64,000 nt of DNA, from NCBI RefSeq assembly GCF_035594765.1, contig NC_085844.1, positions 31,201,923 to 31,265,922 of the forward strand, read 5' to 3'. A model generated the notes under the pieces. The model had not been told where the DNA came from and did not search any database. It worked only from the letters and a program-made list of their open reading frames with translations. This DNA comes from Anolis carolinensis. Lineage: Eukaryota. Made by a program: the position numbers and the translations under genes. Below are positions 2,911 to 21,349 of the stretch, one piece after another (the first letter of the stretch is position 1; the number at the start of each line of letters is the position of its first letter).

Positions 2911-3042
2911 TGAAATACACCTCACATGTAGTTCCAAATGTTCTTCAAAGCCTTTGGAATAAATTTTCATTAGGCCCAAAGATTTCAGGGAAAGTTGAGT
3001 TGAAAAATGGATGAATTTATGGACCTAACTCACTTTAACAGA

Positions 3043-3191
3043 GGGCCCTTCCACACAGCCATATAACCCAGAATATCAAGGCAGATAATCCACAACATCT
3101 GCTTTGAACTGGATTATCTGAGTCTATATTGCCATATAACCCAGATCAAAGCAGATAATGTGTGATTTTATACAGCTGTGTGGAAGGGGCC
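3043..3191. mobile_element. Harbinger-like MITE family B (~150 bp)
   Basis: TIRs ggcccttccacacagc / gctgtgtggaaggggcc with internal aaagcagataat repeats; many copies in the window. Confidence 0.8.
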
Positions 3192-3399
3192 TGAGAAACT
3201 CTGGACACAACTGCCAACACTTCTCAGCTGCACTGGAGACGTTTACTGGGTTTTAAAAAGTAGTTTAAATGGTTTCAGTATAAAAATAACACAACTGGAG
3301 CAACAATTACTCAAACAGTAGCCCCAATGCCAAGTTCACCTGGTTTTCTCCAGAACAGCTAATCTAAATCAGGAATGTCTGTGGCCTGGCTTGAATCTT

Positions 3400-5175: not shown

Positions 5176-5494
5176 TAAGCTATTTTCTTTAGCCAGACAT
5201 ACAGCAATAGCATCATTTTCAATCCCCTGAAATCCCCTGAAAGTTCCTGTAGATGCCTCTTTCTGTGTGTCCTGATACAGGAAAACAGCTAGACATTTTT
5301 TTCTGTTCTTCCCATTCTCCATTGATCAGATCCGGAGGGCTTCAGCTAAGAAAAGGAGTTTGGATTGGAGACGATCATAGCTGCTATCTCCATGATAATG
5401 GCCTAGATTGTAACATATAAAGCACATGTTAGCAAGAACCAGCTATTAAAACATTTGCAACAAAGTAAAAAAAAGAAGCCAGCATGGTATAAAG

Positions 5495-6217
5495 CAGGGG
5501 TCCTCAAACTTTTTAAACCGAGGGCCAGTCCACAATCCTTCAGACTGTTGAGGGGCCGGATTATCATTTAAAAAAAAAATACAAATTCCGATGCACACTG
5601 CACATGTCTTATTTGTAATGCAAAAACAACAAGAAGAAGAAGAACAATGAAAGAACAATACAATATTTAAAAATAAAAACAATTTTAACCAACATACATT
5701 TATCAGGATTTCAATGGGAAGTGTGCTCCTGCTTCTGGCCAATGAGATAGTCAAGTTAATTAGGATTGCTGTTGTTGTTGTGTGCCTTCAAGTCATTTCA
5801 GACTTTGGGTGAGCCTAAGTCTCAAATTTATTTATATATTATTTATTTATTTACTGCATTTATTTACTACATTTGTATCACACCCTTCTCACCCCAAAGG
5901 GGACTCAGAGTGGCTTACAAATTATATGTACATACAATATATTATATTATTAGCATAGCACAATATTACCATTATGTATTATTATATTGAACTGTACCAC
6001 TATACTGTAATATTATGAGTAATATTATATTTAATATAGAATATATAATTAATATTATTATGTGGTATCATTATTAGTGTTATATTGTATTACATTATAA
6101 TATTATCAATATTATATGTATATACAATATATTATATTATAAAACTGAGGGCGGGGGCCAGGTAAATGACCTCGGAGGGCCGCATCCGGCCCCCGGGCCT
6201 TAGTTTGGGGACCCCTG
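5495..6217. mobile_element. Non-autonomous hAT (Charlie-type) DNA transposon
   Basis: TIRs CAGGGGTCCTCAAACT / AGTTTGGGGACCCCTG; perfect 8-bp TSD GTATAAAG at 5487-5494 and 6218-6225. Confidence 0.92.
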
Positions 6218-6225
6218 GTATAAAG

Positions 6226-6692
6226 GTTTGAGCATTGGAATATGACTTTGGAGACCAGTTTTAAGTTCCTACTCAGCCATGAAACCCACCTGGTGATTTT
6301 GGGCAAGTCCTACTCTCTCAGCCTCAGAAGAAGGCAATGGCAAACCTCTTCTGAACAAATCTTGAAAAGTGAATCCTGTGACAACTTCATCTTGGAGTTG
6401 CTATAGGTCAGAAGTGACTTTTTTGTGTCATGAGCTTCTGGTGTGAGAGAATTGGCCATCTGCAAGGATGTTACCCAGGGGATGCCCTGATGTTTTGATG
6501 TTTTTATCACACTTGTGGGAGGCTTCTCTCTCATGTCCTCACATGGTGTTGGAGCTGATAGAGGGAGCTCATCCACACTCTTCCTAGGTTGGATTTGAAC
6601 CAGCAACCTTCAAGTCTTCAGTCCTGCTGGTACAAGGATTTAACCCACTGCACCACCAGGCCCCCAGTGACCTGAAGGCACACAACAACAAG
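6226..6692 (+). mobile_element. tRNA-derived SINE (MIR/core-like), split by the hAT at 5495-6217 and a SINE at 6420-6665
   Basis: tgattttgggcaagtcctactctctcagcctcag core; tail gaaggcacacaacaacaa resumes after the nested insertion; related copy at 35525-35705. Confidence 0.7.
6420..6665 (-). mobile_element. tRNA-head SINE with hairpin/poly-A tail (family C)
   Basis: Poly-T followed by gtgtca...ttctggtgtgagagaattggcc; A/B-box head at the right end; flanked by agtgac duplication; copies at 8050-8166, 23780-24278, 34237-34506, 47176-47330. Confidence 0.8.
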
Positions 6693-8187
6693 AAGTGATA
6701 TAATGGGGCTCCTCTTGATTCAGGGTGGGATGTATAACAAGGTTAATCTATACAAGGCAGCTGCAGACTTTTAACTTCTTTTTATCCATTGTAAAGCGAG
6801 TAGCTACTACAGTGAGTTTTTTTTTCCAGTGTGCCAGACTTTATTCATCAGAAGCTAACAAGATTGTTTGAGTTCAATTGGATCTAGTGGTGTGTTGAGC
6901 TCTGATGACAGAAACACATCGCTCCTAGCTGTGACTACAGAGCCAATGTGGAATAACCTGTCTCCCATTGTGCTGAATTGCCACTATCACTTTTTATCCC
7001 ATGTAAAGACTGCACTACTCGGTGTATGAAAAATGCATTCTTGAACCACTCTGAATTAGTTTTTAATGTACTGTGACCTCGGATTGCCCCAGGATATTAA
7101 TGCTAAATGATTACTTCTGAATGCTTTTTGAATAGCTGCAAAGAGCAATTAAATGTGCCATACATCACACATGACACAGTTAAATGCCTCTTCTGGTCAA
7201 GGAACCTAAACAATTCTTTCAGATGATGGTAATTCCATAGTACTGGAAAGGCAAAAAGAGCACTTGTTACCATAAAAAAGTCTAAATGGGAGTAGGCGAT
7301 AACCTTTGCCTGAGGTTGATCAAAAGGAAATGAATTTTTTATGGAGAGCTAAAAGGAAGATGATTTCTGATTACTGCAAAACTAGTGTCCCATTATATTA
7401 TGCGCTCTTCAGTATCTAGGTATAGAGGGAACGATGATAAATCTCATCATGGAATGACATATTTCCAATTTTATTTTGGTGTGGATGATAAAAGATTGAG
7501 TGTGAACAATAAAACAAGTACAGAGGATAGATAAGATGAGTAAGTGAATTACATCAAACAAGTGGAAAGTGCAAGAAAACATTGTAGGGAGGAGTGCTTC
7601 TACTCCATGCTCCAGACACACCAATCCATTCTAATTGCTTATTTATTGCTTTATGTTATCCAGTAGTTGATTTGTATTTTATTAACATCCCATCACCTTT
7701 GTAAATATGTTATTGTTTACAAATTCACTGCATTTGAACATTTGCTTCGAGTAGGCACAATGGTCAAACTATAATCCAGTATGCTAAATGCTGAAACGAA
7801 TATCCAGCCTCATAATCATTGATTTACAGCCTAACATGTGATGGGAGTTGCATCAGAAGAAAGACATTTACATGCTTCTGCAAATCTATCGATCTTATGA
7901 CCATTGGCAGCTGGTGCTTTCACTGTCAATGGGGTGGTGAATCCATTCTGGGTTTTAGTCTGAACTGTAAAAGAGCTGCTCTAGATCCTAGACCAATAAT
8001 CCCCAAATTCTTGTCCGCTTCAGTTTCCAGAAGTCTCAGCTACCTTTAGCCTCCCACAGGATGGTAAAATATCTGGGCATCCCCTGGGCAACGTCCTTCC
8101 AGACGGCCAATTCTCTCACATCAGAAGCGACTTGCAGTTTCTCAAGTTGCTCCTGACATGCAAAAATACCCAAAACTTTTTAACTCA

Positions 8188-8335
8188 GGCCCCTTCTACA
8201 CTGCCATATAATCCTGATTATCAAAGAAAATAATCCACATTATCGGCTTTGAACTGGATTAAATGAGTCTGCACTGCCATATAATTGTATTCAAAGCATA
8301 TAATCTGGATTTTATATGTCAGTGTAGAAGGGGTC
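8188..8335. mobile_element. Harbinger-like MITE family B
   Basis: ggccccttctacactgcc ... gtgtagaaggggtc; a shorter copy follows at 8427-8501. Confidence 0.8.
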
Positions 8336-8635
8336 TAAAACACATGAAAAACCAGAATTTGGAACATTGCCCAAAACCTGTTTAGAGATTCAGCAACTTG
8401 AACAGTTCCTTTAAACTTTAGTCTAAGGCCTTTCTACACTGCCAGATAATCCAGTTCAAAGCAAATAATCTGGATTTTATATGGCAGCGTAGAAGGGGCC
8501 TCAATCTCACAGCTCCAGACATTTGATTTTTCTGATTTGTTTTGGCACTATTATTACATATCTGAACTGTCCAGGGCACACAAGGTGATATGTATTGATG
8601 AAAAACATTTAAACAGTAAATATATGAGCAAAATA

Positions 8636-9690
8636 TGTTATGATTGAGCCTCATGGCTCTGTTACTGACAGACGTGGGCGTAAGACTCCTCGAGAGTCAG
8701 ATACTCTCGAGGAGCGAGAAAGAAAAAGACTGCGAGACATTTTTGCAGCACCATCTGACGAAGAGTCTTTTGAGGGGTTTACGGAGAGAATGGAGGAGGG
8801 GCTGGTTAGCTCGGAGGAGGATGAGATGGATTGGACTCGGGTGAGGGAGGAATTGGGTGCCACTGGCCATGATGGGATAGAAGATGAATGGGGACCTTCA
8901 GGATTAGACCCATGGTATAGCTGGAGGGATGGGACGGGATCCACAGCTGGAGATGCTGTGGGGCGTAGTCAGAGGTGTTCCAGCTCTGATGAGGAAAGTG
9001 ATGAGGAAACGCCCGGGTTAAGGAGGGCAGCTGACAGTGATGAGGATTTGTAACTGGCATAAAATGGGGCTTGGGAGCAATTGCAAATTGCGTTGGGCAA
9101 GGTAATCTGGACGAACGCTTGGGATCTGTGTGGGACGCTTTCCTGAAGACTGGTGTGTTTTCGTGTGCTGATATCTTGACCTTCCGTCGTCTTCTTGACG
9201 GACGCCATCTCCTGCTTTGAAAACTCGGACTGAACTGACCACGGCTTGTCTTCCCCCTTCTGGACTTGGAAACTACAAACGTCTGCTTCTGGCTTTGATC
9301 TACGGAAAGGAACTGGGTCTACTCTTCTGCTACAATCCTTGGCTGATCTGTTCGTGTTGGAAATCCTGTCTGCTGTGTGTGTGGGAGCGACGCAAGTTAC
9401 TCTAAGCACAGTGTTGGCAGCAGAGAAGAATCTGCTGCCAATTAGTTGCATTCTTTTGTATCTTTTGTTCCTCGGCTTTTGTTTTGTTTATCCCCAGGCT
9501 GAAGCAAGCAGTTTGTTTTTACCCGGATTAAACTTCGGTTTAATCCGGTTTATCTTTTGAACGTTTTTCCTTGTCCCTTTTTGCTCCTAAAGGCTAATAC
9601 TGCCTGGCCCTTGTATTTTACGGGCATTTTTGAGTTCTGTAATCCAATAAACTCTGTTATCTTGAACCTTGTGGCGTTCTGTCCTTGACA
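8636..9690 (+). mobile_element. Solo LTR of an LTR retrotransposon (probably Gypsy/Ty3 or BEL), 1055 bp
   Basis: TGTTA...TGACA termini; perfect 5-bp TSD AAATA (8631-8635, 9691-9695); TATA-like CATAAAA at 9058-9064; AATAAA at 9646-9651; CpG-rich relative to the flanks. Confidence 0.9.
8640..9053 (+). CDS. LTR U3-encoded acidic, disordered 137-aa ORF with an FxGF (LEDGF-IBD/TND-interacting-like) motif; may be the C-terminal tail of a longer element ORF
   Basis: Uninterrupted ORF from the LTR edge to just before the TATA box; contains KRLRDIFAAPSDEESFEGF, several S-x-x-E/D CK2 consensus sites and basic patches RRGRK/RERKRLR. Confidence 0.55.
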   Translation: MIEPHGSVTDRRGRKTPRESDTLEERERKRLRDIFAAPSDEESFEGFTERMEEGLVSSEEDEMDWTRVREELGATGHDGIEDEWGPSGLDPWYSWRDGTGSTAGDAVGRSQRCSSSDEESDEETPGLRRAADSDEDL

Positions 9691-9730
9691 AAATACATTG
9701 TAAAGTACATGGTAAACTTTCATTTAAAAT

Positions 9731-9925
9731 ACAGGTTGAGCAGCTCTTAACCAGATTTCCAAAATACTCCAAAATTGTTCACATGTGTGTGGCTTTAATT
9801 TTCTGATGTTTCAATTTTTCAGTGTACACAAACTTTCTTCCATGCACAACATTATTAAAAATATCGTATAAAATTACATTTAGGCTATGGGTATAAGATG
9901 CAAATGAAACATGAATGAATAGCAA
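9731..9925. mobile_element. Tigger/pogo-like MITE fragment
   Basis: ta-caggttgagca start; related to 40922-41250 and 63206-63439. Confidence 0.55.
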
Positions 9926-10172
9926 AATTAGGATCACCCATATCGTAGTATTTAATGGTTTTTATGTATGGTTGTGAGAACTGGAAGGCGAAGAAAGAGG
10001 AAAGGAAAAAAAATCAACTCATTAAAAATACTGTGTTTGAGGAGGGTTCTGTAGATGCTATGCAGTCCCAAAATGAAAAATAAGTGGGCCTGAGGCTGGA
10101 TCTACACTGCCATATAATCCAGATTGTCAAATCAGATAATCCAGATTATCTTCTTTGAACTAGATTATATGA

Positions 10173-10320
10173 GGCCCCTTCTACACTGCCATATAAAATC
10201 CATATTATCTGCTTTCAACTGGTTGATATGGCAGTGTAGACTCATATAATCCATTTCAAAGCAGATAATGTGGATTATATGATTTGATAATCTGGATTAT
10301 GTGGTAGTGTAGAAGGGGCC
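10173..10320. mobile_element. Harbinger-like MITE family B nested in a copy of its own family
   Basis: TIRs ggccccttctacact / agtgtagaaggggcc; TSD TGA (10170-10172, 10321-10323). Confidence 0.85.
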
Positions 10321-10340
10321 TGAATCTACACTGACATATA

Positions 10341-10990
10341 CCGTATATACTTGAGTATAAGCCGACCCAAATGTAAGCCGAGGCACCTAATTTTACCACA
10401 AAAAACTGGGAAAACATTGACTCCAGTATAAGCCGAGGGTGGTAAATTTCAGAAATAAAAATAGATACCAATAAAATTATATTAATTGAGGCCTCAGTAG
10501 GTTAAATGTTTTTGAATATTTACATAAAGCTCAAATTTAAGATAAGACTGTTCAACTCTGATCAAATCATTATTCTCATCTTCAATGTACATGTGCTTAT
10601 GTATCCTTTTAATAATAATAGAGTAAAATAATACATGTAATAATAATAATAATAAATAATAATAAATACAGGAAAATAATGCATGTAATAATAAATAGAG
10701 TAAAATAATAAATGCAATAATAATAAAAATAAGATCAGAGTGAAATAATAAATGTAATAATAATAATAGAGTAAAATAAATGTAATAGTAGCAACAATAA
10801 TAGAGAAAAATAATAAATGTAATAATACCAATAATAATAGAGAAAAATAATAAATGTACCATATATTCTCGAGTATAAGCTGACCCAAATATAAGCCAAC
10901 CAGGACCCTCACCCGAGTATAAGCCGAGGGGGGCTTTCTCAGTCTTAAAAAAAGGGCTGAAAAACTAGGCTTATACTCTAGTATATACAG
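10341..10990. mobile_element. Tc1/mariner-superfamily (Tc2/pogo-like) non-autonomous element
   Basis: TIRs ccgtatatacttgagtataagcc / ggcttatactctagtatatacag, TA TSD, AT-rich interior, internal second copy of the left end at ~10859-10900. Confidence 0.85.
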
Positions 10991-11418
10991 TAATTCAGTT
11001 CAAAGCAGATAATTTGAATTTTATATGGCAGTGTAGGTGGGGCCTGAGGACAGCCCAAGCCTGAATGCTACCTAGAACTCAAAAAGGTTCAACTGAGGCT
11101 ATGGTACTTTGGATATATCATAAGGCAACATGATTCATAAGAAAAGATGGTAATGCTCAACAAAGTGGAAGACAATCGGAAAAGAGAAAGACCACTGTAC
11201 AGCTGGATAGTTTCAGGCACAGATACCATGCAACAGTTCACTGGAGCCATAAAGTGGAGGAGGGAGCAAGATCATACCTCCTAGCTCTGCCTTGACCACC
11301 ATGTACTCAGTGGAAGCTGTAAACAGGTTTCAGCACATGACTCCCCATATGGCCTGTACACAGAGTCAGGAACTTTAACTGACAGGATTCAAGATCATGT
11401 GGAAAATCCTATGTGTGT

Positions 11419-11905
11419 ATATATATATATAAAGGGTAATGAAATTTCGGCCTAGGACAAAACAACAAAACTACACATCCCAGAAACACTAAACTTGCCA
11501 GCACAACCCCTCATCCATGCCTCTACGTTCATACAACAAAAAGGAAAGAAAAATAAAGTCCTAATTAGAGGGAGAGGAATAATTGTTTTTATCCAATTGC
11601 TGCCAGTTAGAAGGTTAAGCTCTGCCCACTTGGTCTCCTAGCAACCCACTCAGCCCAGGGGACAGGCAGAGTTAGGCCTCACTTAGATCTCTTCCACACT
11701 GCCTATAAAATACAGATTATCTGATTTTAACTGGATTATATGGCAGTGTAGACTCAAGGCCCTTCCACACACCTATATAACTAATTTGTAATGGACTTAA
11801 TGTCATGAGAAAACCTTTACCCTTTACCTTAACTACCACCAATTCCTCAATACTTTATTTCCCATACCACCATACTTCGCCACAGCAACGTGTGGCCGGG
11901 CACAG

Positions 11906-11909
<4 letters not shown>
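11419..11909 (+). mobile_element. Non-autonomous Helitron
   Basis: 3' subterminal hairpin gccacagcaacgtgtggc followed by ...CTAG|T terminus; tatatatataaa 5' end; no TSD. Confidence 0.8.

Positions 11910-11989
<80 letters not shown>
11910..11989. repeat. Compound (GT)n(AT)n microsatellite
   Basis: Directly visible. Confidence 0.95.
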
Positions 11990-11990
<1 letters not shown>

Positions 11991-12687
11991 GCACAGAGGC
12001 TGAGTGGCAGACTAGCAGCTGCTGTCTTACTACTCCTACACATTCAGTGAACATCTGAAGCGAAAAACAAGCTTTTATGGCACAATAGTGATTGGCAGTA
12101 GAAACAATAGACATCCTTTGTAAGATATTGTCTTTCTCAAAGCATAAATTATGAAATGTACAAATTGAGTCCACACTATTCTGATTACTGGCACAGGCTG
12201 AAAGTGCGACCACATTTTATGTAACAATGAGATTGTGAGATATGAATTGTAATGGTGTGTTCCATCAAAGAACAATGTCCTCATTTGGAAATGTCTCCCT
12301 TAGACAAACTTCAGTTGTCCATACGTTGGAGAGATGTATGGAGAAGATCCTAAAAAGTAAATGTGCCTTCTAAACAGCAAGATGAAGTGGTTCTTTAGAT
12401 ATATCGTTTTAAGTGCTTTTAAACTATCATTTTCAGTCTGAAATGGTTGAATATACCATTTGCCTTTAAGTTATTTTTGTTATTTTAAGTTGTTTTTAAA
12501 TGTTCAGACTGCTTGTCAGATATAGGGTGGGAAATGGTGCTACCATCATAAAAGTGAATACCAAAAATTACAAGGATGTAAACGGAGTTTACCTTCTAAC
12601 TGTTTAACAGGAGGAAAAAAAGAAACTGAGAGATCCATAGATCTATGAAGAAGGCTTTGAGTGCCTAGCTCTTAAAAGTCTCACTGG

Positions 12688-12837
12688 GGGCCCTTCCACA
12701 CAGCCATATAACCCAGAATATCAAGGCAGAAAATCCCACAATATCTACTTTGAACTGGGTTATGTGAGTCCACACTGCCATCTATTCCAGTTCAAAGCAG
12801 ACAATGTGGGGTTTTATTCAATTGTGTGGAAGAGGCC
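12688..12837. mobile_element. Harbinger-like MITE family B
   Basis: gggcccttccacacagcc ... tgtgtggaagaggcc. Confidence 0.8.
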
Positions 12838-16427: not shown

Positions 16428-17566
16428 AACCTTTCCAAGCTTTGCACATGTAGAGTAAAGTACAAGTGAAATACAGTTGGGGATGAGAACCCTGTTCCCT
16501 CTTCTATATGTTGAACTTGTGCACAGGTTTGAAGACTGTAAGTATAGTTTAGGAAAGTAGAAAGTACTTGTAATATTCCATATTTATTTATTTTTTAATG
16601 TTTCCATGCTTTAGGTCTTATTTTAGACATAATTTCAGTCTACTTCAGGAGAGAAAATGAGTTTGAACCTTGGAAAAATGTGAATAAAAAAACATTGGCC
16701 ATAGAATTATGCTGGAGGAACTAGAGATTCCTAGTGGAGTTTCTCCCTAGGAATTTCTAGGTTCCCCATGATTTGATGACCAATGTCATGTGAACATAGA
16801 CCATTGATTTGGGCTGGCTCCCATTATTCACCACTTTGTCCCTTTTTGCTGTTGCATACAGTTGAATTTCTCAACCTAATGGAAACCCATGCAAAATCTA
16901 AAGTAGAAGAAGGACATTGCTAATTCATTTTATTTCAGATTGAATAGCAAACCAAAGATTTATTAATGCAATGTAAAATGTTAACTGGCAGGTAAAAGTA
17001 ATCCTCTTAATGAACATGATTAAAAGAACAGTTGGAATAGAGAAACTGCAGTGTGGGCAACACTGATGGAATTAATAGACCTTACAATATTCAGAGAATC
17101 AATTAAAATGCCCCTCTTTGGGGTTTAAAGAGAGCATGAATTTATTCAGTTCAGAACAAGGGACAAAAAATTAAACACACAAATGTCATTAAGAACATTG
17201 GGGCATTTAAAATATCTTTTGAGAACAGCACACATCCAGTTATATGTTAACTCTGTAGGAGACTTTCAACAAAACATTGCATTCTTGTGAATTTTATTTT
17301 TTGAGATACCATTCAGAGAGATATAAGAAATAAAAGTGCAGGTGATACTAGGTTTTCAGAAAACAAAATATAACACCTTGAAATGTCAAAATGAAGAAAT
17401 TTGACCTTAACATTAGAAATGTTGGGAGAATCCTGCTTAAGATATGTATAATTTATTGCACATTGTTCAATAATAATTAAAAAACACCAAAGCATTAGCA
17501 AAATGCACTAATATAGGGTGGGCAACACCTAAATAACAACAACAACAACAACAACAACACAATAAT

Positions 17567-18047
17567 ACAAAGGTAGAGGAAAATGAGCATGCAAAGATAC
17601 TGTGGGACTTTCGAATCCAGATTGCCAAAGTTTTGGAACACAACATACCAGACATCACAGTTATGGAAAAGAAAAAGGTTTGGATTATTGATGTCGTCAT
17701 ACCAGATGACAGTCAAATTGATGAAAAACAACAGGAAAAACTCAGCCGTTATCAGGACCTCAAGATCGAACTGCAAAGGCTCTGGCATAAACCAGTACAG
17801 GTGGTCCCAGTGGTAATCGGCACACTGGGTGCCGTGCCAAAAGATCTCAGCCGGCATTTGGAAACAATAAACATTGACAAAATTATGATCTGTCAATTGC
17901 AAAAGGCCACCTTACTGGAATCTGCATGCATCATCCGAAAATACAACACACAGTTCTAAACGCTTGGGAAGTTTTCGACTTGTGATTTTATGATACGAAA
18001 TCCAGCATATATATCTCGTTTGCTGTGTCATACTATGTCTTTGTGTT
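17567..18047 (+). mobile_element. R4/Dong-clade LINE 3' end (restriction-like endonuclease)
   Basis: ILWDF...PDITV..KKKVWIIDV.IP.D..IDEKQQEK..RYQDL (PD-D/ExK RLE domain); flanked by (CAA/TAA)n. Confidence 0.9.
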
Positions 18048-20120: not shown

Positions 20121-21349
20121 TAAACCCAAGTTATCCAAGCCTACAGAAGGAAACTTTGTGTCTGTCCAAGGTGCTGAAATCAGAAGCTCCTTATTCACTG
20201 AGTTTTGAACCACTGCACATCCTATCCCTTGCTGACAGATTGTGCTGGTAGCAGAGCATTTTGTTGACAGAAGAATTTTAACCTTCATTAGTCTGAATAA
20301 GTTTGAGTCAAAATTGTATTTGCTACATGGAAACAAGGTACACTGAAATAGGGGGACTTGCTTCCAGATAAATTTGCAGACGTTTGTGTTGTTCAAAAAT
20401 GTGTCAGATTGGAGGATGCTAGTGAATATTTTTATTCATTCTGAAATTGTTCAGTATTAGTCATTGCCTTCTTTCTTTCTCTCCCATCATTTTGTCAAAA
20501 AGGAGCTTATGTATCTAACAAAGAAACCCCTACAAATTTAATTTCTGTTTAGACTGAATCAAAATATAAAACAATTACCTTGCATCATTGGTTTAAACTG
20601 GGATGGGGAATATGTTGTTGAGCTACAATTACCATCAGCCATAGCCAGCATTATCAATGATAGGATGATAGGAACCCACTTGCATGCTGGTTCTGGGAAA
20701 ACATCATTTATTCATGATAAAGGAGTGGTAATCCAACAACATATAGGTGGCCAATTCATCCTCATCTTTGTGCTAAATAACTGAATATGTGGTTTTGAGT
20801 ATGCCACTATTATAGTAATGATATCACTGAATTTAGAAAGCATTGGCATCAACCCAATGACAACTAGCATAGTTTCATTATTTATGTTTTTCACCAATCT
20901 GAGGCATAAATCTGTTCATTCCTATGTGTATCTTGGTGGAAGTTCCATTCAATCAACAGGGCTTGTATTTCTCAGGACATGTACTCAGAACTTCATTGGA
21001 AACCAGTGCAATGTAGCAATTAACTGAGGCCTCATTTACAGATTATCTGATTTGAAATGGATATTAGCCTACACTGCCACATAATCTAGTTCAAAGCAGA
21101 TATTCTGGATTTTATATGGCAGTGTAAGTGGGGCTTGAATGCATTGTGGCAATGATGTAAATTAAAGGTTGAAGTCCATGATAAAAACAGACTTCCTACT
21201 TTAGCTTCAAGTGCCCATGCCCAGACTACTTCTGCAAAATATAAGCATGGTTCCATTAGAAAACCTCAGCTCCATGGCACATCTTTTCTGGTGTGAGTGT
21301 AGAGGCTTTTGATATACCAAACTGTATGTAATAAATCTCTAAAACAGTA

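What the first reader, a model, noticed from the sequence alone, without database searches (positions are those of the whole stretch)
8724..8822. LTR-encoded peptide carries a CDCA7L/JPO2-like LEDGF/TND-binding motif: candidate host-motif capture for chromatin tethering
Seen: the ORF inside the solo LTR encodes KRLRDIFAAPSDEESFEGFTERMEEGLVSSEED. Established: (D/E)-x-E-x-F-x-G-F preceded by a short amphipathic helix and acidic CK2 sites is the IBD-binding/TND-interacting motif. JPO2/CDCA7L, PogZ, MLL1 and IWS1 use it to bind the LEDGF/p75 integrase-binding domain and related TFIIS N-terminal domains. HIV integrase binds the same LEDGF domain to target integration into active genes. DEESFEGF fits the consensus exactly. 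The human CDCA7L N-terminus as I recall it (KEVADIFNAPSDDEEFVGFRDDVPMETLSSEES; needs verification) aligns without gaps at 16/33 identities, including the downstream SSEE. That is more than the short consensus requires. Inference: this LTR retrotransposon family captured or convergently evolved a host TND-docking motif. It could tether integration to LEDGF/HRP2/elongation-factor chromatin, or act as a competitor or anti-silencing factor. I know of no description of this for a reptile LTR element.
Basis: partly seen in the sequence, partly recalled or inferred. Interest (0 to 1): 0.93.

Follow-up and report, generated by a model that had tools for sequence, protein, structure and literature searches.

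The report
Integrase tail with LEDGF-docking-like motif
The open frame in this green anole solo LTR is the leftover end of a jumping gene's integrase, and it carries a conserved peptide built like the motifs host proteins use to dock on the chromatin reader LEDGF, so the element may choose its insertion sites by mimicking a host protein (binding untested).

Summary
Window 8636-9690 is a solo LTR (TG..CA, 5-bp duplication AAATA). Its U3 holds an open 138-codon frame, and the peptide at 8724-8822 includes DEESFEGF.

It is not a free-standing LTR gene. In five full-length copies elsewhere in the Anolis carolinensis genome, the pol frame of a Ty3/gypsy chromovirus-clade element runs through the polypurine tract into the 3' LTR. 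The frame is therefore the integrase C-terminal tail. Here it is a relic.

The tail is under purifying selection (dN/dS 0.10-0.28). In the motif block, 13 of 25 codons vary only synonymously and 4 change the amino acid. The block fits the published TND-interacting motif: a predicted helix, an 8-residue acidic Ser/Pro linker, FxGF, and disordered surroundings.

The family lacks the chromodomain that nearly all its nearest relatives carry. Diverged anole and Podarcis relatives carry one to three similar motifs.

Capture from CDCA7L is not supported. The database match is at chance level (E=1.5), although 12/20 identity with JPO2 M1 exceeds composition-matched shuffles. Binding and targeting are untested.

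The scan found the same family before on other DNA of this genome (s1-528306 and s1-528310, both followed up).

LTR-encoded integrase targeting tails are known in plant CRM elements. I found no paper describing a retrotransposon integrase with this motif.

The parts
8631..8635 (.). Target-site duplication AAATA, left copy
   Evidence: Read directly. The same 5 bases follow the LTR at 9691-9695. Five full-length copies also have 5-bp duplications.
8636..9690 (+). Solo LTR (1055 bp, TG..CA) of a Ty3/gypsy chromovirus-clade family of Anolis carolinensis
   Evidence: Aligns over its full length with both LTRs of full-length elements in L001, L003, L004, L005 and L006. Single copy in the window.
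8637..9053 (+). 138 codons plus stop: relic of the LTR-encoded C-terminal tail of the integrase. The ORF listing reports it as 8640..9053 from its internal ATG.
   Evidence: In full-length copies the same frame is continuous with pol. All ten LTR copies read keep 138 codons without indels. dN/dS is 0.10-0.28.
8706..8744 (+). Predicted amphipathic helix LEERERKRLRDIF (tail residues 24-36): the helix part of the TIM-like motif, with L/I/F anchors
   Evidence: It is the only helix in the AlphaFold2 model of the tail, pLDDT about 76-80. It is 69% identical to the diverged relative P0035, against 6-19% in the flanks.
8745..8768 (+). Eight-residue acidic Ser/Pro linker AAPSDEES, with a CK2-type site S-D-E-E
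   Evidence: Read from the sequence. Its length and make-up fit the 8-16 residue acidic linker described in PMC9987994.
8769..8780 (+). FxGF (FEGF)
   Evidence: It is kept in all eight DNA copies compared codon by codon, with synonymous changes at F and G, and in all 10 rows of the tail alignment A1, which includes P0035. It is altered in two other copies: FKGF in P0017 and FEGS in a 5' LTR copy in L003.
8781..8828 (+). Acidic stretch downstream of the motif, with SSEED (CK2-type sites)
   Evidence: Read from the sequence. Conserved within the family but only 1/16 identical to P0035.
8829..8849 (+). Second conserved island DWTRVRE, function unknown
   Evidence: 6/7 identical to P0035. Only 1 of 7 columns varies among 20 distinct tails.
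8907..8975 (+). Third conserved island PWxSWRDGTGSTAGDAVGRSQRC, function unknown. It could be a protein motif, a U3 DNA element, or both.
   Evidence: 3 of 23 columns vary among 20 tails. 14 of 23 codons are invariant at DNA level in 8 copies.
9059..9064 (+). TATA-like box ATAAAA, 6 nt after the stop codon
   Evidence: CTGGCATAAAATG is conserved in all ten LTR copies, including the most diverged subfamily. Promoter function is inferred.
9090..9100 (+). GCGTTGGGCAA: the inferred first bases of R, complementary to the primer-binding site of full-length copies (Tf1-type self-priming)
   Evidence: TTGCCCAACGC lies 2 nt after the 5' LTR in all five full-length copies and is the reverse complement of 9090-9100. 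The site is 31 nt after the TATA-like box. The mechanism is inferred from what is known of Tf1.
9646..9651 (+). AATAAA polyadenylation signal near the LTR's 3' end
   Evidence: Found at the same relative position in the eight LTR copies that are complete at that end; L002 and the split L003 subfamily-C LTR lack it.
9691..9695 (.). Target-site duplication AAATA, right copy

Best explanation
Shown:
- Window 8636-9690 is a young solo LTR of a recently active Ty3/gypsy (chromovirus-clade, Tf1/sushi-like) retrotransposon of Anolis carolinensis.
- Its open frame is the part of the pol gene that, in full-length copies, reads through the polypurine tract into the U3 of the 3' LTR. That part adds a 138-residue disordered tail to the integrase just after its SH3-like domain.
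- The family has no chromodomain there, although nearly all its nearest relatives do.
- The tail is kept by selection on the protein. Its best-kept block is a helix, an 8-residue acidic Ser/Pro linker and FxGF. This is the architecture of the TND-interacting motifs that JPO2/CDCA7L, MLL1, IWS1 and others use to bind the IBD/TND of the H3K36me3 readers LEDGF/p75 and HRP2.

Inferred:
- After translation as part of Pol, the tail docks the integrase-cDNA complex on LEDGF/HRP2 or another TND protein, possibly more tightly after CK2 phosphorylation. This would bias integration toward transcribed chromatin.
- It would be a linear-motif equivalent of what lentiviral integrase does with a folded surface, and a replacement for chromodomain targeting.
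- The copy in this window does nothing. It is what homologous recombination between the two LTRs left behind.
For: Structure of the element:
- L001 has LTRs at 5182-6322 and 10369-11509, gag at 6381-7181, and pol at 7181-10786 ending 418 nt inside the 3' LTR.
- Pfam finds PR, RT, RNase H, integrase H2C2, rve and SH3_Tf2-1, and no chromo domain.
- Five full-length copies have 5-bp duplications and LTR pairs 99.5-99.9% identical. Three have an open 1214-codon pol.

Selection:
- Tail dN/dS is 0.10-0.28, against 0.05-0.08 for the enzymatic part.
- The coding part has no indels, while the non-coding LTR remainder is gappy and more diverged.
- The motif block has 13 synonymous-only and 4 amino-acid-variable codons, against 28 and 40 in the rest (Fisher p=0.014).
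- Against the diverged anole relative P0035, the motif block is 68% identical and its flanks 6-19%.

Motif architecture:
- AlphaFold2 predicts a single helix at residues 24-36 in an otherwise low-confidence chain.
- The published definition is quoted (PMC9987994).
- The only PDB hit of the tail is the LEDGF IBD-JPO2 M1 fusion 6emo_A, with 12/20 identities. None of 100,000 shuffles reaches 12.

Relatives:
- Most of the 120 best integrase relatives carry PF00385.
- The family sits in a squamate clade (SH-aLRT 95) with Podarcis elements that carry a chromodomain plus two acidic [F/L/M]xGF motifs.

Precedent: an LTR-encoded integrase targeting motif in place of a chromodomain is known in plant CRM group A (PMC3059260).
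Against:
- Database statistics do not link the tail to known IBMs. The hit to 6emo_A has E=1.5, and a profile of ten motif copies finds no IBM-bearing chain.
- Short acidic-aromatic motifs are promiscuous and could serve another partner.
- Of the six family insertions with known surroundings (five full-length copies and the split subfamily-C LTR in L003), only one lies in an annotated gene body, an EBF intron in L006. The others appear intergenic or nested in repeats. The sample is far too small, and is filtered by selection, but it gives no support.
- Two further conserved islands in the tail are unexplained, so the motif may not be the main function.
Confidence: 0.56

Rival explanations
1. 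The tail is a selected part of the integrase, but the helix-acidic-FxGF block serves a different purpose. Candidates are nuclear import, histone or nucleosome contact by an acidic tail, particle assembly, or control of integrase activity. On this reading the likeness to LEDGF-binding motifs is coincidental.
For: - The sequence link to solved IBMs is at chance level (E=1.5; nothing with a motif profile).
- The tail has basic clusters next to the helix and two other conserved islands of unknown role.
- The few insertions seen give no support for a preference for gene bodies.
Against: - All three published TIM features are present in the right order and spacing inside a disordered region.
- The three phenylalanines of the tail all lie in this block.
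- Seven of the 15 non-anchor positions match JPO2 M1 (p about 1e-4 against local composition).
- Similar motifs recur, sometimes in tandem, in diverged relatives whose tails are otherwise unalignable.
Confidence: 0.25
2. The motif is homologous to host CDCA7L/JPO2. An ancestor of the family captured part of the CDCA7L mRNA by template switching and fused it to the integrase. This is a claim about origin and is compatible with the tether function.
For: - There are 12/20 ungapped identities with JPO2 M1, including the linker residues A-P-S-D, more than any of 100,000 shuffles gives.
- The diverged relative P0035 also has A-P in the linker, so that state may be old.
Against: - phmmer of the tail against 1.84 billion representatives gives four hits, none of them CDCA7L.
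- The likeness ends with the motif.
- Other subfamilies are less like JPO2: 10/20 and 8/20 by my count.
- Podarcis motifs differ in sequence while keeping the architecture, as expected for a short motif shaped by its binding pocket.
Confidence: 0.12
3. The frame is a stand-alone accessory gene in U3, like MMTV sag or lentiviral nef, translated from its own ATG at 8640.
For: - An ATG opens the frame 4 nt into the LTR and is kept in all copies.
- Gene predictors have called it as a separate protein (P0001, P0035).
Against: - The frame is continuous with pol across the polypurine tract in every full-length copy. Upstream of the LTR the frame carries the integrase SH3-like domain.
- The TATA-like box and the inferred start of R lie downstream of the stop, so the 5' LTR copy is not transcribed from its own promoter.
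- No splice or internal promoter evidence was found.
Confidence: 0.04
4. The conservation reflects DNA-level function of U3 (enhancer or integrase-binding end sequences), and the open frame is a by-product.
For: - Synonymous divergence in the tail (about 0.18) is lower than in the rest of pol (0.33-0.37) for the same pairs.
- Codons 91-113 are mostly invariant at DNA level. Some DNA-level constraint therefore probably coexists with coding.
Against: - dN/dS is 0.10-0.28 in every pair.
- No indel occurs in 414 nt across ten copies, while the rest of the LTR is gappy.
- Thirteen of 25 motif codons change only synonymously.
Confidence: 0.03

Closest known systems
JPO2/CDCA7L IBD-binding motif M1, and the TIM/IBM class in general (MLL1, IWS1, PogZ, MED1, ASK)
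   Same: It has a helix ending in D-I-F, an 8-residue acidic Ser/Pro linker, FxGF, and acidic Ser-rich sequence after it, all in a disordered region. It shares 12/20 identities with the JPO2 stretch in PDB 6emo_A.
   Different: It sits at the end of a retrotransposon integrase, not in a host transcription regulator. There is no significant similarity outside the motif. Binding is untested.
Lentiviral integrase with LEDGF/p75 or HRP2 (own knowledge and PMC9987994)
   Same: An integrase would use the same host domain as a chromatin tether toward transcribed genes.
   Different: HIV integrase binds the IBD with a folded catalytic-core dimer surface. Here the proposed contact is a disordered linear motif that copies the host ligands.
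Gammaretroviral (MLV) integrase C-terminal tail binding the ET domain of BET proteins (own knowledge)
   Same: A short motif in an unstructured integrase C-terminal tail recruits a host chromatin reader. This is the closest known mechanism.
   Different: The motif, the host domain and the expected target chromatin all differ (promoters and enhancers versus gene bodies). The MLV tail is not LTR-encoded.
Chromovirus integrase chromodomains, and the LTR-encoded CR motif of plant CRM group A elements (PMC3059260)
   Same: It occupies the same place in the protein, after the SH3-like/GPY-F region. As in CRM group A, the coding region runs into the 3' LTR and the chromodomain is replaced by another putative targeting motif. 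The nearest relatives are chromoviruses.
   Different: The motif is unrelated to the chromodomain fold. I did not compare it with the CR motif. The proposed partner is a host adaptor protein rather than a histone mark or centromeric chromatin.
Ty5 integrase targeting domain binding Sir4 (own knowledge)
   Same: A very short, phosphorylation-dependent motif in the integrase C-terminus imitates a host ligand and sets the target site.
   Different: It is a yeast copia-type element, and both motif and partner differ.

Membership tests
TND-interacting motif (TIM) / IBD-binding motif (IBM) | Short alpha-helix with F/V/L/I anchor residues (PMC9987994) | tested here: met
   The AlphaFold2 model of the tail has a single helix at residues 24-36 (LEERERKRLRDIF), pLDDT about 76-80. 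This is a prediction only.
TND-interacting motif (TIM) / IBD-binding motif (IBM) | Acidic flexible linker of 8-16 residues rich in D/E, G, S/T | tested here: met
   The linker AAPSDEES has 8 residues, with 3 acidic and 2 Ser. It is at the short end of the range.
TND-interacting motif (TIM) / IBD-binding motif (IBM) | FxGF, required by all known LEDGF/HRP2 partners | tested here: met
   FEGF lies at 8769-8780. It is kept in all eight DNA copies compared codon by codon and in all 10 rows of the tail alignment.
TND-interacting motif (TIM) / IBD-binding motif (IBM) | Lies in an intrinsically disordered region | tested here: met
   Mean pLDDT is 56.9, and there is no other secondary structure in 138 residues.
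TND-interacting motif (TIM) / IBD-binding motif (IBM) | CK2 phosphorylation of the linker that raises affinity | not testable with these tools
   S-x-x-E patterns are present (SDEE, SSEE). Phosphorylation itself cannot be shown here.
TND-interacting motif (TIM) / IBD-binding motif (IBM) | Physical binding to a TND/IBD domain | not testable with these tools
   No TND/IBD sequence could be obtained, so no complex prediction was run.
TND-interacting motif (TIM) / IBD-binding motif (IBM) | Statistically supported sequence similarity to known motifs | tested here: inconclusive
   The only PDB hit is 6emo_A (JPO2 M1), but with E=1.5. The motif profile finds none. The shuffle test is strongly positive: 0 of 100,000 shuffles reach 12/20.
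Ty3/gypsy (Metaviridae), chromovirus clade, Tf1/sushi-like | gag, then pol with PR-RT-RNase H-integrase order; LTRs TG..CA; 5-bp duplication | tested here: met
Ty3/gypsy (Metaviridae), chromovirus clade, Tf1/sushi-like | Chromodomain at the integrase C-terminus | tested here: not met
   Pfam finds no PF00385 in the 1201-residue pol. Only 30 residues lie between the SH3-like domain and the LTR. Relatives do carry it, so the family belongs to the clade by descent but not by this feature.
Ty3/gypsy (Metaviridae), chromovirus clade, Tf1/sushi-like | Self-priming: the primer-binding site is complementary to the first bases of the transcript | tested here: met
   TTGCCCAACGC after the 5' LTR is the reverse complement of LTR bases at window 9090-9100, 31 nt after the TATA-like box. 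Complementarity is shown; priming is inferred.
CDCA7L/JPO2 homologue (captured host exon) | Significant similarity extending beyond the short motif | tested here: not met
   No CDCA7L is among the four hits in 1.84 billion representatives. The PDB alignment covers 20 residues only.
CDCA7L/JPO2 homologue (captured host exon) | Nucleotide similarity to the lizard CDCA7L exon | not tested
U3 accessory gene (sag/nef-like) | Own reading frame and expression separate from pol | tested here: not met
   The frame is continuous with pol. The promoter elements lie downstream of the stop.
LTR-encoded integrase putative targeting domain (as in plant CRM group A) | [quoted passage not shown] | tested here: met
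   precedent in PMC3059260. Similarity to the CR motif itself was not tested.

The most novel reading that the evidence does not exclude
A clade of squamate chromoviruses added a host-mimicking TND-interacting motif to the integrase tail. In this Anolis family the motif replaced the chromodomain. It docks the integration complex on LEDGF/HRP2 and steers insertions into transcribed, H3K36me3-marked chromatin. This would be an independent, linear-motif solution to the tethering problem that lentiviruses solved with a folded interface. The motif is partly encoded in the LTR, so it is copied to both ends of every new insertion.
Probability: 0.4. Interest if true: 0.85.

Novelty: new variant of a known kind. 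Interest (0 to 1): 0.72.

Why it matters
Where a retroelement lands decides how much harm it does and how long it survives. Known solutions include chromodomains, the Ty5-Sir4 and Ty1-AC40 contacts, MLV-BET and HIV-LEDGF. A retrotransposon integrase carrying a copy of the host's own LEDGF/TND ligand would be a new entry in that list.

It would also be a natural case of short-motif mimicry by a transposable element, and an independent route to the LEDGF tether used by HIV. A chromodomain-bearing sister family in the same genome (P0053/P0056) offers a built-in comparison.

The idea can be tested directly with a peptide, a recombinant domain and existing genome data. It also explains why so many anole LTRs contain long open frames that gene predictors annotate as proteins.

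Tried and rejected
- Pfam on the 137-aa ORF found nothing.
- ESM Atlas by features gave no usable hit.
- The scan's own index by sequence, and by the words LTR/U3/provirus, was blank.
- phmmer of the tail against 1.84 billion representatives gave four hits. Two belong to the family. P0034 is a repeat protein and looks spurious. P0035 is a diverged anole tail. None is CDCA7L.
- P0035 is not on record as a called gene, so no DNA was fetched for it.
- A profile of ten motif copies against the PDB gave only chance-level hits to ribosomal protein eL31.
There is therefore no evidence here on transcription or on copy variants from reads. Two local scripts read the whole window file after that, one to count motifs and one to extract the tail.
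- All runs offered were contigs with guessed RNA/DNA labels.
- Complex prediction with a LEDGF IBD or other TND was not run. No such sequence was available from the window or from search results, and the tool's references cover only bacteria, archaea and phages.
- The papers of Sharma 2018 and Cermakova 2021 are not held. The motif definition was taken from the 2023 review instead.
- One literature query was malformed.
- Rejected readings: a stand-alone U3 gene, and purely DNA-level conservation (see rivals).
Full report
**1. What is at the coordinates**

The frame lies in a unit, 8636-9690, that begins TG and ends CA. The unit is flanked by AAATA on both sides and occurs once in the window. 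It sits between unrelated short repeats that recur across the window. The organism is Anolis carolinensis, from the names attached to related proteins.

**2. What the unit is**

A protein search with the ORF returned a 192-aa anole protein, P0002. In it, an integrase SH3-like domain (PF24626) runs straight into the ORF's sequence.

P0002's locus, L001, holds a full-length element:
- LTRs at 5182-6322 and 10369-11509
- gag at 6381-7181
- a 1201-codon pol at 7181-10786

Pfam finds protease, reverse transcriptase, RNase H, and the integrase zinc, core and SH3_Tf2-1 domains, but no chromodomain. The pol frame passes the polypurine tract (..GAGAGGGGATAG) and continues 138 codons into the 3' LTR.

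Four more full-length copies (L003 minus strand, L004, L005, L006) have the same layout and 5-bp duplications. Their LTR pairs are 99.5-99.9% identical. Three of the five have pol open over 1214 codons. The family is therefore young and was recently active. I describe the copies only. I built no consensus and single out none.

**3. Where the frame lies within the LTR**

In all ten LTR copies, including the most diverged subfamily, the stop codon is followed after 6 nt by a TATA-like box: CTGGCATAAAATG, at window 9059-9064. The sequence TTGCCCAACGC, 2 nt after the 5' LTR of every full-length copy, is the reverse complement of window 9090-9100, which lies 31 nt after that box. This is the arrangement of self-priming Tf1/sushi-type elements (established knowledge). 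It places the start of R near 9090.

The frame therefore fills U3 from its second base to just before the promoter. The 5' LTR copy is not transcribed from its own promoter, and the 3' copy is translated only as the end of Pol. In the solo LTR of this window the frame is a relic. The ATG at 8640 is simply the Met in ..GDSVM(I/V)EP..

**4. Is the tail selected?**

All ten LTR copies read at DNA level keep 138 codons without an indel. The non-coding remainder of the LTR is gappy and more diverged.

| Region | dN/dS |
|---|---|
| Tail, all pairs | 0.10-0.28 |
| Enzymatic part of pol, same elements | 0.05-0.08 |

In the 25-codon motif block across eight copies, 8 codons are invariant, 13 vary only synonymously and 4 change the residue (I/L, A/E, S/T, E/D). 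The rest of the tail has 28 synonymous-only and 40 amino-acid-variable codons (Fisher p=0.014).

Of the 33 family proteins held from the searches (P0001-P0033), 25 carry the acidic xFxGF stretch. The other eight are truncated or frameshifted before it.

A diverged anole relative, P0035 (XP_016852620), is 36% identical overall (E=3e-13). Its identity by block is:

| Block | Identity to P0035 |
|---|---|
| Motif block (residues 24-48) | 68% |
| Flanks (2-23, 49-64, 102-138) | 6-19% |
| DWTRVRE | 86% |
| PWxSWRDGTG | 64% |

P0035 also has an extra FEGF motif upstream and a degenerate third copy. Conservation at DNA level alone cannot explain this pattern. Some DNA-level constraint probably coexists with coding, because dS is lower in the tail than in pol.

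**5. Does the block fit the known motif class?**

The 2023 review of the TFIIS N-terminal domain defines TIMs by three parts (PMC9987994):
- an obligate short helix with F/V/L/I anchors
- an acidic linker of 8-16 residues rich in D/E/G/S/T, which CK2 phosphorylates
- an FxGF that all known LEDGF and HRP2 partners need

An AlphaFold2 model of the tail, built from a 10-row alignment, is low-confidence throughout except for one helix at residues 24-36, LEERERKRLRDIF. Next come the 8-residue linker AAPSDEES and FEGF, followed by acidic Ser-rich sequence. The tail has only three phenylalanines, and all three are in this block.

Chance alone is an unlikely source. FxGF occurs in 0.43% of shuffles and the strict acidic form in 0.029%. 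The strict form occurs once in all six frames of the 64-kb window.

**6. The CDCA7L likeness**

phmmer of the tail against all PDB sequences finds one chain, the LEDGF IBD-JPO2 M1 fusion 6emo_A. It shows 12/20 identities over KRLRDIF..FEGFT, but E=1.5. The rest could not be checked.

None of 100,000 composition-preserving shuffles of the tail reaches 12/20. Seven of the 15 positions outside the five anchors also match (p about 1e-4 against local composition).

Several results point away from homology:
- An exhaustive search of 1.84 billion representatives returns no CDCA7L.
- A profile of ten motif copies finds no IBM-bearing chain.
- By my count, other subfamilies match JPO2 M1 at 10/20 and 8/20.
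- Shared pocket and CK2 constraints inflate such matches.

I read this as mimicry by convergence, with capture neither excluded nor supported. Deciding between them needs lizard CDCA7L DNA, which I could not obtain.

**7. Relatives and history**

Most of the 120 best integrase relatives carry a chromodomain, PF00385. In a maximum-likelihood tree of the integrase region (104 rows, quick search), the family sits on a long branch inside a squamate clade of 16 rows with SH-aLRT 95. That clade contains three other groups:
- an anole chromodomain family whose LTR-encoded tail ends in RRSARIAAK
- Podarcis muralis elements with a chromodomain followed by two acidic [F/L/M]xGF motifs, such as RWREMFETSEDEEDSFRGF
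- a Podarcis group with ..STFQGFASDEE

The Anolis and Podarcis tails align only at the motif. Among 119 relatives with a complete SH3-like domain, only the two Anolis clusters of this family and the two Podarcis proteins P0055 and P0059 have an acidic hydrophobic-xGF motif in the tail.

The motif is therefore either old in this squamate clade or gained more than once. In this Anolis family the chromodomain has gone: only 30 residues separate the SH3-like domain from the LTR.

**8. Mechanism proposed**

Shown: the tail is part of the integrase, it is selected, and it has TIM architecture at the position where chromoviruses carry their targeting domain.

Inferred: the tail docks the integration complex on LEDGF/HRP2 or another TND protein and biases integration toward transcribed chromatin.

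The few insertions seen neither support nor test this. One lies in an EBF intron. One is 2 kb from a gene. The others appear intergenic or nested in repeats.

**9. What is known**

An LTR-encoded integrase C-terminus carrying a non-chromodomain targeting motif is established for plant CRM group A elements (PMC3059260). Motif-based tethering by an integrase tail is established for MLV-BET and Ty5-Sir4 (own knowledge). LEDGF tethering is established for lentiviruses.

Full-text searches that combined LEDGF, IBM/TIM or TND terms with retrotransposon or transposon found no paper describing such a motif in a retrotransposon integrase. The review's section on viral mimicry names only lentiviral integrases. 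I therefore rate this a new variant of a known kind.

The scan itself has met the same family repeatedly on other DNA of this genome. Two notes were followed up with the same reading (s1-528306, s1-528310). I re-derived the key points independently here. I added the Podarcis relatives, the codon-level test of the motif block, the self-priming and U3 mapping, and the CRM precedent.

**10. Limits**

No lizard CDCA7L was available. The structure model is a prediction from a shallow alignment.

Noticed in passing
L003:10525-17851: Nested insertion. A full-length element of the family (minus strand, LTRs at 11598-12652 and 16697-17751, duplication ACTCG) sits inside the LTR of a diverged subfamily. 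That LTR's frame is fused in the annotation to a LINE-type reverse transcriptase fragment (P0033).
   Followed up: partly
window 8829-8849 and 8907-8975: Two further conserved islands in the tail, DWTRVRE and PWxSWRDGTGSTAGDAVGRSQRC. They are kept even in the 36%-identical relative P0035. The second is mostly invariant at DNA level too. Their function is unknown: another protein motif, a U3 DNA element, or both.
   Followed up: partly
L001, L004, L005 pol: Synonymous divergence is about half as high in the LTR-encoded tail (about 0.18) as in the rest of pol (0.33-0.37) for the same pairs. This hints at double constraint (coding plus U3 function) or at recombination between subfamilies.
   Followed up: no
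P0055, P0059, P0086, P0097, P0099, P0114, P0115 (Podarcis muralis): Wall-lizard relatives carry a chromodomain, or a degenerate one that Pfam does not call, followed by long acidic tails with one or two FxGF-type motifs. The motif is therefore not confined to Anolis.
   Followed up: partly
P0053, P0056 (Anolis carolinensis; 366 and 94 cluster members): A sister anole chromovirus family keeps the chromodomain. Its tail crosses the same ..GDSVM.. polypurine-tract/LTR junction and ends in RRSARIAAK, the HMGN-like motif noted by the scan elsewhere.
   Followed up: no
L003:17200-17751 (5' LTR of the nested element, minus strand): In the 5' LTR copy the motif reads FEGS-L, while the 3' LTR of the same element keeps FEGF. 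This is a post-insertion change in a copy of the frame that is not translated.
   Followed up: no
P0005 (XP_062838049.1): A 416-aa protein annotated as 'opioid growth factor receptor-like protein 1 isoform X4' clusters at 90% identity with this family's pol. It is probably an annotation chimera or a transposon-derived exon.
   Followed up: no
window 8185-8336, 8433-8505, 10101-10330 (and 3042-3192, 11683-11761, 12688-12817, 21039-21140, 59983-60138): Copies of a short palindromic repeat (CTGCCATATAATCC..GGCAGTGTAGA), MITE-like, flank the solo LTR on both sides and recur across the window.
   Followed up: no
integrase tree: The family's integrase sits on a very long branch (1.25 changes per column) compared with its squamate relatives. 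This suggests fast change of the integrase around the time the chromodomain was lost, or an unsampled lineage.
   Followed up: no
They lie outside the LTR, in the right flank, and were left alone.
   Followed up: no
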